A stretch of DNA of 63,662 nt, the filler included, from Olpidium bornovanus S191 (taxonomy: Eukaryota > Fungi > Olpidiomycota), in NCBI GenBank assembly GCA_017911155.1. It is 32 parts of 32 records of this genome, joined end to end, with 100 filler letters (N's around TTAATTAATTAA, not from the genome) between each part and the next. Parts side by side here need not be neighbours in the genome. Positions count along the whole stretch, not along the records: positions 22,524 to 24,731 come from JAEFCI010001023.1; 31 more parts are not named here. One strand, 5' to 3'. Shown here piece by piece: positions 22,301 through 24,731 of the stretch (positions are counted from its first letter, which is position 1; every line of letters starts with the position of its first letter). A program made the position numbers and the translations under genes. The notes beneath the pieces were generated by a model. The model had not been told where the DNA came from and made no database searches. It saw only the letters and a list, made by a program, of their open reading frames with translations.

Positions 22301-22524
22301 GAATGTTTTGTAAATGGACAGGGGAGATGGTAGAGAAGGCCAAATGCGTTTCTCTTGAAAAGGAGAAGGGGGTGCTATTTTCCCAAACTTCGGAGGTCTC
22401 GTTCTCAGCAGAGAAGCGTCCGANNNNNNNNNNNNNNNNNNNNNNNNNNNNNNNNNNNNNNNNNNNNTTAATTAATTAANNNNNNNNNNNNNNNNNNNNN
22501 NNNNNNNNNNNNNNNNNNNNNNNC

Positions 22525-24731
22525 ATGGAGTCAAGGCCTCTGTACGCCGCGATGAATGGTGCCGCCGGTTCTTTGATAGTTCTCAGTGCCGCAATGTCTC
22601 CGGTCAGCTGCGTCGACGTGCAGCTGCTGGTTAAAGACACCCGTTCAAATCGGTACTCGGTCGTGCGGTATTCGGTATGATTTCTTTACGGGACGAATAA
22701 AAAAAATAGCACCCTACACCTTATTTCCTTTTTTTTTTCCTGCCGGGGTCTTCTCGCTTATCATAAATTGACTTACTTCGCACCGCGGGCGGGGAAAAAA
22801 AAACGCATCAGCTCAGCAAATCCAGCTGGTCCGAGACGTTTGTGTTCCCGAAATATGTGCCTAACAGTAAGCGGCCCGCTGTGGAAGTAAAGCGCGATGT
22901 GATCAGGAAACGAAAGAAACGACAAAGCTGACGGGTACTTACACACCGCTCACCCCCTTCCTCCTATCACCGTTTCCCGCCCGCCCGCCACCTAGTATCT
23001 GCCGGCAGCACGTCACGGGCTGTCCCAGTGTACAGCGGGATTGAGATTGCGTCGCAGGGCGCCGCCGAAGTGCGCGAGTTGCAGCTGAGCGGCATGCATT
23101 TTCACCGGACCTTGGGTCGGGACATGTTTATATACGGAAATGCGCTGTTTTACAGGTAAACAAAAAAAAAAAAAAAAAAAAAAAAGAAAAAAAAGGATCA
23201 GCGTTTTTTTTAAAAATCCCCGACCGAAATACACCGTTTCCTCGAACCCGGAACCCCCAACGGCGTTTTACCGGTCCAGCCCGAGCGATGGCCGGTCGGT
23301 GTACCTGATACGCACCTTCCCGGGGAACACCTCCGTCGCCGCGTTGTCGTCGGCGGACGAGGGGGATTACGCGTTCATGATCACGGACGGTCAGGTAATG
23401 ATGGGAAAATCTTCGCGAAAATTCCCCGTTCTCCGACGCGACGTGCGGTCAATCGTTTCAAACCTCCCCCTTTCCCCCCCTTCCCCCCCTTCCCCCCCCA
23501 TCCCACCTCACTTTCTCTCTCGCCCGCACGCTAATCTAGGTCTACTACGGACAACTCGGGGTGTCACGGACGGTGCCGGTCACGGACTATTTAGACACGA
23601 GCGTGATCCGCGGGCTCATGTTTGACGAGCTCGGAGAGTTGAATCTGTTCACCGTCGGAGTGCAGAATGACACCGGGAGCGCCTACGTCGAAAGCCGAAT
23701 CGTCGACGTCCAGAGCATGCTGGATTATGCCGAGTACGCCGATCAGGTTAGGGTCATTCCCTCACCGAAGCAACCCGAGGTTTTCTATTTTTTTTTTGCT
23801 GCTGCTTTTTCTTTCGTTGCCCGGAGGTTGTCGGACGTGGGGGCAACAGGCCGTGTCGTGACAATCTGGAAATTGATAACTGCTTGTCCGCTCCGTGAAC
23901 ATCTTCTCTCAGGCGAAATGCCCCTACGCGCGTAGGGAATATTTGGCTCCGAACCTCGTCCATTTCACGCGGAGGTGTGTGGAATTTTTCCCAAGAAGCC
24001 GGCTGGTGCTCTGCAAGCCGAGCGCGGGGGAGTTTTGATGGGGGACGGATGACGTTTGTTTTTGACGTATGCACACATGAATATCGTTGATCGGTTTACA
24101 GCTTCAGGACCGCGACCAACGACCTCCCGTCGGATCTGTTTCTGGACGTCGAGGAGGAATACAAGTTCGCGGTCATCCTGACCCCAAGCGACTGGTTAGA
24201 GGACCCGGCGACGCTGAACGTATACTTCTCACTGACCAACGAGGGTGTGGTAAAGGTCGAGTATAATCGGACGGTGGTGAACGGGCAAGTCCGGTACGAT
24301 GTACGTACTTTAATAAAATTTTCTTGCGCAAACAAGCACATGATTTGCCGTCCTTCCCCGACTGCCCAAATGACCCTGATGGTCGTCCGATGCGGGGAAA
24401 AAATAAAACAAAAATAAAATAAAACGCTCCGACAAGGTATCCTTGCGCGACCGGGGAACCGTAACTAATCAGGCCGCGTCCGGACAAGACGCGACCCCTA
24501 CACAGCTGAGGTTGATCGTCGCGAATTCCACGTTTGACTGCCTTAATTTCAAACGGGCGACGTCCGTCAAAGTAACGATGAATTTCCGCAGTCCTAAATT
24601 TGCTTCCGTTTTTTACTTTTTTTTTTTTCCTTTTTTTTGGCCGTGGACTTGGAACTCATATGCGGCGTTCGCGTCCACGATCGCTCTTTAATTTTTTATA
24701 TATTATAGTCCGAGACCATCAACGTCATGAA
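22525..24731 (+). CDS. CATSPERG: CatSper channel auxiliary subunit gamma-like protein, internal multi-exon fragment
   Basis: Spliced exons: MFIYGNALFYSPSDGRSVYLIRTFPG..GDYAFMITDGQ|VYYGQLG; AKCPYARREYLAPNLVHFTR (from 23913); DLPSDLFLDVEEEYKFAVIL (24102-24300); VSLRDRGTVTNQAASGQDATPTQLRLIVANSTFDCL (24437-24571). These parallel recalled CATSPERG motifs KCPF..EFL..PN..YTR, LPERIFLDKGTEYSFAIFL and ITLKDK..DQGISG..T....V..S...C in the same order. Confidence 0.7.

What the first reader, a model, noticed from the sequence alone, without database searches (positions are those of the whole stretch)
22525..24731. CatSper-gamma-like subunit: a sperm-type flagellar Ca2+ channel component in a fungus
Seen: eight or nine small GT-AG exons, not apparent as any single ORF, splice into a beta-rich protein. 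Four blocks follow recalled CATSPERG motifs in order: IYGNALFYS..G..YAF...GQVYYG; KCPYARREYLAPNLVHFTR; LPSDLFLDVEEEYKFAVIL; VSLRDRG..NQAASGQ..T.L.L.V.NS.FDC. Known: CatSper drives sperm hyperactivation, is absent from non-flagellated fungi, and alpha/beta/gamma homologs have been reported in the blastoclad Allomyces. Inference: this organism's zoospores retain a CatSpersome with a large extracellular subunit, possibly for host-directed chemotaxis. If the source is Olpidium-like, this places the complex in the zoosporic lineage closest to non-flagellated terrestrial fungi.
Basis: partly seen in the sequence, partly recalled or inferred. Interest (0 to 1): 0.8.

Follow-up and report, generated by a model that had tools for sequence, protein, structure and literature searches.

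The report
Spliced CatSper-gamma-like gene fragment
This 2.2-kb piece holds the middle third of a real, spliced and transcribed gene whose product looks like the gamma auxiliary subunit of the CatSper flagellar calcium channel, a kind of gene already catalogued in swimming (zoosporic) fungi, so it is a sound but fairly ordinary find.

Summary
Nine GT-AG exons on the + strand join into one open 368-residue frame, cut at both edges of the piece. Assembled contigs from two independent public studies carry this sequence with all eight introns removed at the predicted junctions and no mismatches. The longest of these contigs is 3,642 nt, so the full protein is probably about 1,100-1,200 residues.

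Scanned exon by exon against Pfam, only exons 7 and 8 hit anything. Both hit the CATSPERG Ig-like domain, PF22851, in the right order (profile 2-39, then 74-110; 14.5 and 15.4 bits; cut-off 27). Nine non-coding ORFs from the same piece gave no CatSper hit. Chance agreement is roughly one in a million.

The upstream part, expected to be a beta-propeller, matched nothing when scanned exon by exon. I could not submit the joined protein to Pfam or a folding tool, because a spliced product has no reference. The organism was not identified, so "fungus" or "Olpidium" is plausible but unproven. The pore subunits could not be searched for.

CATSPERG homologues in flagellated fungi are already published. 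This is a new member of a known kind.

The parts
22525..22674 (+). exon 1 of the piece (residues 1-50 of the fragment). The frame is open to the piece's edge, so this is not the true N-terminus.
   Evidence: The contigs extend 733-1,463 nt upstream of 22524.
22812..22866 (+). exon 2 (55 nt)
   Evidence: GT..AG on both sides. Joints 22673/22811 and 22866/22996 appear in the contigs of X1 and X2.
22996..23155 (+). exon 3 (160 nt).
   Evidence: The 3' junction follows from contiguous contig coordinates; a CAG ambiguity and a skipped A-run explain the apparent offset.
23280..23394 (+). exon 4 (115 nt)
   Evidence: joint 23392/23538, cut +2.
23540..23746 (+). exon 5 (207 nt, 69 residues), presumed to be part of the beta-propeller region
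   Evidence: No Pfam or PDB hit when scanned alone. The only atlas leads are weak, to beta-propeller-type families, all under 0.9.
23913..23974 (+). exon 6 (62 nt).
   Evidence: joints 23742/23909 cut +4, and 23972/24100 cut +2.
24102..24300 (+). exon 7 (199 nt).
   Evidence: Residues 8-44 of the exon match PF22851 profile positions 2-39 (E 0.035, 14.5 bits). The splice is confirmed.
24437..24571 (+). exon 8 (135 nt).
   Evidence: Residues 1-37 of the exon match PF22851 profile positions 74-110 (E 0.019, 15.4 bits). The junction 24300|24437 is exact in both contigs.
24709..24731 (+). exon 9, cut off by the edge of the piece after 23 nt
   Evidence: joint 24571/24709, GT..AG. The contigs continue about 1,000-1,070 nt beyond it.

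Best explanation
The piece is the middle third of a nine-or-more-exon nuclear gene of a eukaryote, most likely a zoosporic fungus. The gene encodes a homologue of CATSPERG, the gamma auxiliary subunit of the CatSper flagellar Ca2+ channel. The fragment covers the C-terminal part of the extracellular region that lies ahead of the Ig-like domain (a beta-propeller in mammals) and most of the Ig-like domain itself. By analogy with the mammalian complex (inferred, not shown here), the full protein would be a single-pass type I membrane protein of about 1,100-1,200 residues. Its Ig-like domain would contact the Ig-like domains of the other large subunits to form the canopy roof over the pore. Its transmembrane helix would pack against one pore-forming CatSper subunit. 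In this way it would help to assemble and tune a Ca2+ entry channel that steers flagellar beating in the swimming cell.
For: Shown here:
- The exon model gives one open 368-residue frame.
- The gene is transcribed and spliced exactly as modelled in contigs of two independent studies.
- Of seven exons scanned against 24,736 Pfam models, only exons 7 and 8 hit anything. Both hit PF22851 CATSPERG_Ig-like, at profile positions 2-39 and 74-110. That is collinear, with plausible spacing, and sums to 29.9 bits against a cut-off of 27.
- Given one hit, the chance that a second exon hits the same model at E 0.02-0.035 is about 1e-6 per exon. With the number of exons tested, the overall chance is roughly 1e-6 (my estimate).
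- Nine non-coding ORFs of the same piece gave no CatSper hit.
- The fragment has 5 N-glycosylation sequons, no transmembrane-like segment and a beta-favouring composition.
- The transcript contig is at least 3,642 nt, with about 1,460 nt before the piece and about 1,070 nt after it. That leaves room for an N-terminal domain plus propeller upstream and a stem plus transmembrane helix downstream.

From the literature:
- All four canopy subunits carry an Ig-like domain that forms the canopy roof, and their transmembrane helices pair with the pore subunits (bioRxiv 10.1101/2024.11.18.624146).
- CATSPERG is an ancient subunit also found outside animals (PMC5362262 citing Cai et al. 2014).
- A CATSPERG orthogroup of 12 proteins is restricted to flagellated fungi (PMC13358043 supplement).
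Against: - Each Pfam hit is below the family's gathering score on its own, and the joined product could not be scanned.
- Exons 1-6 (250 residues) matched no CatSper beta-propeller profile when scanned exon by exon.
- No exon matched the solved CatSper chains by phmmer.
- A phmmer search of exon 7 against 1.84 billion representatives found no eukaryotic relative. It found only three bacterial proteins with Ig-like repeats.
- The transmembrane helix, the signal peptide, the pore subunits and the organism all lie outside what I could see.
- Two raw RNA runs carrying the same organism label gave no reads. That is no test either way.
Confidence: 0.8

Rival explanations
1. It is a CatSper canopy subunit, but not the gamma orthologue. 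It could be a beta-, delta- or epsilon-like subunit, or a lineage-specific paralogue with the same propeller-plus-Ig-like-plus-stem-plus-transmembrane build.
For: All four large subunits share this architecture and an Ig-like domain. The Pfam scores are low, so assigning a subfamily from 75 aligned residues is weak.
Against: The only family hit, twice, is the gamma-specific Ig-like model. No beta, delta or epsilon model appeared even at E up to 10.
Confidence: 0.1
2. It is an unrelated secreted or surface protein with a generic beta-sandwich domain, and the two CATSPERG hits are weak fold-level resemblance rather than homology. It has nothing to do with a Ca2+ channel.
For: Both hits are sub-threshold. 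The only significant phmmer hits of exon 7 are bacterial proteins with Ig-like repeats, which shows some generic beta-sandwich signal. There is no match to the propeller profile or to the solved CatSper chains.
Against: Generic resemblance should bring up several of the many Ig-like, fn3 or Big models in Pfam. Only PF22851 came up, from two separate exons, in the correct order and spacing. The inferred protein size and the position of the domain fit CATSPERG.
Confidence: 0.08
3. The gene is a true CATSPERG homologue, but the source is not a fungus. It could be another flagellated soil or root-associated eukaryote, or a contaminant binned into a fragmented assembly.
For: Nothing in the piece identifies the taxon. 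The sequence turns up in runs labelled with four different organisms and in a soil metagenome. The one Olpidium assembly in the literature was binned from non-axenic material. CatSper subunits also occur in non-fungal protists (methods list).
Against: Short GT-AG introns of 124-166 nt and a contig of about 2 kb are compatible with the Olpidium bornovanus assembly, which has 13,695 contigs in 29 Mb and an N50 of 0.002 Mb. This is compatibility only, not evidence.
Confidence: 0.3

Closest known systems
Mammalian CATSPERG (gamma subunit of the CatSper complex, PDB 7EEB; Pfam PF15064 and PF22851)
   Same: Both halves of the Ig-like domain match the CATSPERG Ig-like profile in order. That domain is preceded by about 250 residues of beta-rich, glycosylation-sequon-bearing extracellular sequence. 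The inferred overall size is about 1,100-1,200 residues.
   Different: Sequence similarity is very low: sub-threshold per exon, no phmmer match to solved chains, and about 12 residues fewer between the two matched profile stretches. The propeller part is not recognisable exon by exon. The source is a microbe with short introns, not an animal, and the cell type that expresses the gene is unknown.
CATSPERG orthogroup of flagellated fungi (12 proteins in 184 fungal proteomes; Kossakowski and Muszewska 2026, PMC13358043) and the CATSPERB/G/D homologues expressed in Allomyces (bioRxiv 10.1101/230292; Cai et al. 2014 as cited in PMC5362262)
   Same: It is the same named family in microbes that swim with a posterior flagellum. 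In that study too, only 7 of the 12 fungal members reach the Pfam CATSPERG model, which fits the weak profile scores seen here.
   Different: I could not fetch any of these proteins to align with the fragment, so orthology is not shown. This gene's product is not in the protein collections searched, so it seems to be unannotated.
CATSPERB, CATSPERD and CATSPERE (the other canopy subunits)
   Same: They share the general build of propeller, Ig-like domain, stem and single transmembrane helix, and the Ig-like domains meet at the canopy roof.
   Different: None of their Pfam models was hit at E up to 10.

Membership tests
CATSPERG (CatSper auxiliary subunit gamma) | Significant, collinear similarity to the CATSPERG Ig-like domain profile (PF22851) | tested here: met
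   Exon 7 matches profile 2-39 (E 0.035) and exon 8 matches profile 74-110 (E 0.019). These are the only hits among 7 exons scanned against 24,736 models. Nine non-coding control ORFs gave none. My estimate of the joint chance is about 1e-6.
CATSPERG (CatSper auxiliary subunit gamma) | The whole protein reaches Pfam's curated gathering score (27 bits for PF22851) | tested here: inconclusive
   Each exon alone scores 14.5 or 15.4 bits. The simple sum of 29.9 exceeds 27, but the joined product has no reference and could not be scanned.
CATSPERG (CatSper auxiliary subunit gamma) | A CATSPERG-type beta-propeller domain (PF15064) N-terminal to the Ig-like domain | tested here: inconclusive
   Exons 1-6 gave no Pfam hit when scanned one at a time. 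Exons of 20-69 residues have little power. The composition is beta-rich, and the atlas leads to propeller-type families are under 0.9.
CATSPERG (CatSper auxiliary subunit gamma) | A single C-terminal transmembrane helix after a stem region, and an N-terminal signal peptide (type I topology) | not testable with these tools
   Both ends lie outside the piece.
CATSPERG (CatSper auxiliary subunit gamma) | Overall length of roughly 1,100-1,200 residues | tested here: met
   The spliced contig is at least 3,642 nt and the piece occupies positions 1,464 to about 2,570. This is compatible with that size only if most of the contig is coding. The reference length is from my own knowledge of human CATSPERG.
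CatSper channel complex | Pore-forming CatSper1-4 and other auxiliary subunits encoded in the same genome | not testable with these tools
CatSper channel complex | Expression in the flagellated stage and location in the flagellar membrane | not testable with these tools
   Transcription and splicing are shown, but the stage and tissue of the coded runs are unknown.

The most novel reading that the evidence does not exclude
The source is Olpidium or a close ally, and the gene is part of a complete CatSper complex kept in the zoosporic lineage nearest to the non-flagellated land fungi. In that case a sperm-type Ca2+ steering channel persisted right up to the loss of the fungal flagellum, and it may guide zoospores to host roots.
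Probability: 0.3. Interest if true: 0.45.

Novelty: new member of a known kind. Interest (0 to 1): 0.3.

Why it matters
CatSper is the best-studied channel for steering a flagellum with Ca2+, and its large extracellular subunits are poorly understood outside mammals. Each additional microbial homologue helps to trace when the canopy subunits arose and where they were lost, and offers a simpler cell in which to study them. Here the gene appears to be missing from public protein sets but is clearly expressed, so it is a useful correction to an annotation. If the organism is a root-infecting zoosporic fungus, the channel would be a candidate for how zoospores find hosts. However, the family's presence in flagellated fungi is already published, so this does not change the picture.

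Tried and rejected
1. Pfam scan of the joined product, HHpred-like comparison, AlphaFold model and fold search against 7EEB were all left out.
2. phmmer of exon 7 against 1.84 billion representatives gave only three bacterial proteins with Ig-like repeats: one with SLH and Big_5 domains, an amylase with CBM26 and fn3, and a Calx-beta protein. These are generic beta-sandwich hits, not relatives.
3. Two scans of JGI metagenome contigs, with exon 5 and with exon 7, found no encoded relative.
4. An exact look-up of the 161-residue ORF in public assemblies found nothing on record.
5. phmmer of exons 1, 3, 4, 5, 7 and 8 against PDB sequences gave no CatSper chain. The hits for exon 7 (NKG2-A and a poxvirus host-range protein, E about 0.5) are chance.
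6. An atlas search by language-model features gave nothing usable for exon 7, and for exon 5 only leads under 0.9 to BNR, SBBP and RCC1-type families.
7. Raw RNA runs X22 and X19 gave 0 reads in the 6% of each run that was read. This is no test.
8. Rfam found no RNA family on either strand, and minus-strand ORFs have no Pfam hits, so I rejected an antisense or non-coding reading.
I replaced it with stop-free non-coding ORFs.
11. Cai et al. 2014 (PMC4169769) is not held. It is cited only through PMC5362262.

Full report
**Scope.** Only window 22524-24731 is real sequence; the rest is N and a linker. All work was done inside that range.

- All eight gaps begin with GT and end with AG, and are 124-166 nt long.
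- The joined 1,106 nt read as one frame of 368 residues without a stop, while the other two frames are full of stops.
- Exons have 58% G+C. Several introns are A/T-rich with homopolymer or simple repeats.

**Independent proof of the splice model.**

- A search of public runs found that runs of a coded "organism A", from several studies, hold 36-38% of the sampled words of the piece. That is about what exons alone would give.
- One contig from run X1 (3,642 nt, study P1) and one from run X2 (2,843 nt, study P2) cover every exon with no mismatches and skip every intron.
- Six joints are listed as GT..AG skips at my coordinates, allowing for the stated cut ambiguity.
- The other two (23155|23280 and 24300|24437) follow from uninterrupted contig coordinates. 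For the first, a shared CAG and a skipped A-run explain a three-letter offset.

So the gene is real, transcribed and spliced as modelled. The contigs run 733-1,463 nt further upstream and about 1,000-1,070 nt further downstream. The ATG at 22525 is therefore not the true start, and the full product is likely to be about 1,100-1,200 residues if most of the contig is coding. Two raw RNA runs with the same organism label gave no reads in the 6% sampled, which is no test.

**What is the protein?** A spliced protein has no reference, so I scanned the exons one at a time against Pfam at E up to 10.

| Exon | Pfam hit | Exon residues | Profile positions (of 127) | E-value | Bits |
|---|---|---|---|---|---|
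| 1, 3, 4, 5, 6 | none | - | - | - | - |
| 7 | PF22851 CATSPERG_Ig-like | 8-44 | 2-39 | 0.035 | 14.5 |
| 8 | PF22851 CATSPERG_Ig-like | 1-37 | 74-110 | 0.019 | 15.4 |

- The order is right. The 22 residues left at the end of exon 7 roughly fill the profile gap, with about 12 positions missing.
- Each hit is below the gathering score of 27, but the simple sum is 29.9 bits.
- These E-values are for one protein against 24,736 models. The chance that a second exon hits the same model at that level is therefore about 1e-6. Allowing for seven exons tested, the overall chance is still around 1e-6 (my estimate).
- As a control, nine stop-free non-coding ORFs from the same piece, on both strands, gave one unrelated hit at E 0.42 and no CatSper hit.
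- No model for the beta, delta or epsilon subunits appeared.

**Features of the fragment.**

- V, S, T and Y are abundant.
- There are five N-x-S/T sequons and three cysteines.
- No hydrophobic stretch is strong enough for a membrane helix.

This fits an extracellular, beta-rich, glycosylated region.

**Searches that found nothing.**

- phmmer of exon 7 against 1.84 billion representative proteins did not find the protein itself or any eukaryotic relative. The three hits at E below 0.001 are bacterial proteins with Ig-like, fn3 or Calx-beta repeats, matched at several stretches, which is generic beta-sandwich resemblance. The product therefore appears to be absent from public protein sets.
- Two scans of JGI metagenome contigs found no relative.
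- An exact look-up of the longest ORF found no contig.
- phmmer of six exons against PDB sequences did not reach the solved CatSper chains.
- The protein atlas gave nothing usable for exon 7. For exon 5 it gave only weak leads to beta-propeller-type families, all under 0.9.
- Rfam found nothing.

These blanks reflect short queries and a fast-evolving family. CatSper proteins are noted for poor conservation outside the membrane segments (PMC5362262). Only 7 of the 12 fungal CATSPERG orthogroup members reach the Pfam CATSPERG model (PMC13358043 supplement).

**How it most likely works.**

Shown here:
- The gene is expressed and spliced.
- Its product carries a CATSPERG-type Ig-like domain preceded by about 250 extracellular-looking residues.

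Inferred from the mammalian complex:
- The four large single-pass subunits form a canopy over the pore.
- Their Ig-like domains contact one another at the canopy roof.
- Each transmembrane helix packs against the S2 segment of a paired pore subunit.
- Gamma also takes part in contacts between neighbouring channels.

The most likely role here is the same: a structural and regulatory partner of a CatSper-type Ca2+ channel in the flagellar membrane of a swimming cell, controlling turns of the flagellar beat.

**Membership.**

- The Ig-like criterion is met statistically but not formally, since the joined product was not scanned.
- The propeller criterion is inconclusive.
- Topology, pore subunits and flagellar expression could not be tested from this piece.

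I file it as a probable CATSPERG homologue (0.8). Smaller probabilities go to another canopy subunit (0.1) and to an unrelated beta-sandwich protein (0.08).

**Organism.** Nothing in the piece names it.

- The sequence occurs in runs labelled with four different organisms and in a soil metagenome. This suggests a soil or host-associated microbe that rides along in other organisms' samples.
- The published Olpidium bornovanus assembly consists of 13,695 contigs in 29 Mb, binned from non-axenic zoospores washed off cucumber roots. That matches the size of this piece.
- This is compatibility, not evidence.

**Novelty.** The following are already published:

- CatSper channels in Allomyces.
- Expression of CATSPERB, G and D homologues in Allomyces.
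- The ancient origin of the beta, gamma and epsilon subunits.
- A CATSPERG orthogroup restricted to flagellated fungi, mapped across 184 fungal proteomes that included O. bornovanus.

The only paper held that mentions both Olpidium and CatSper is that survey. The text available to me does not say whether Olpidium has the gamma subunit. This is therefore a new, apparently unannotated member of a known kind. Interest is modest (0.3), and somewhat higher if the source proves to be Olpidium with a full complex.

Noticed in passing
window 23158-23194, 23466-23504, 24399-24424, 24609-24638: Four of the eight introns carry long simple repeats: a 37-nt A run, a C-rich CCCCCCTTC array, an AAAAT-type array and a 30-nt T-rich run. 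Read laying skipped three of these (the A run, the AAAAT-type array and the T-rich run) as repeats. Such tracts probably contribute to the fragmentation of the assembly.
   Followed up: partly
window 22524-24731 (runs X1-X18): Parts of this sequence are held by runs labelled with four different coded organisms (A-D) and by a soil metagenome. Two large 2026 RNA runs labelled organism A gave no reads. This pattern suggests the gene's owner is a microbe travelling in samples of other organisms, such as a root parasite, rather than organism A itself.
   Followed up: no
window 22525: The piece begins one base before an in-frame ATG, which makes the fragment look like it has a start codon. The transcript contigs extend 733-1,463 nt further upstream, so this is coincidence.
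   Followed up: yes
window 24103-24300 (exon 7): The only proteins reaching E below 0.001 among 1.84 billion representatives are bacterial surface or carbohydrate-active proteins with repeated Ig-like, fn3 or Calx-beta domains, each matched at 4-7 stretches. This is a reminder that a short beta-sandwich query picks up repeat proteins by summed weak matches.
   Followed up: yes
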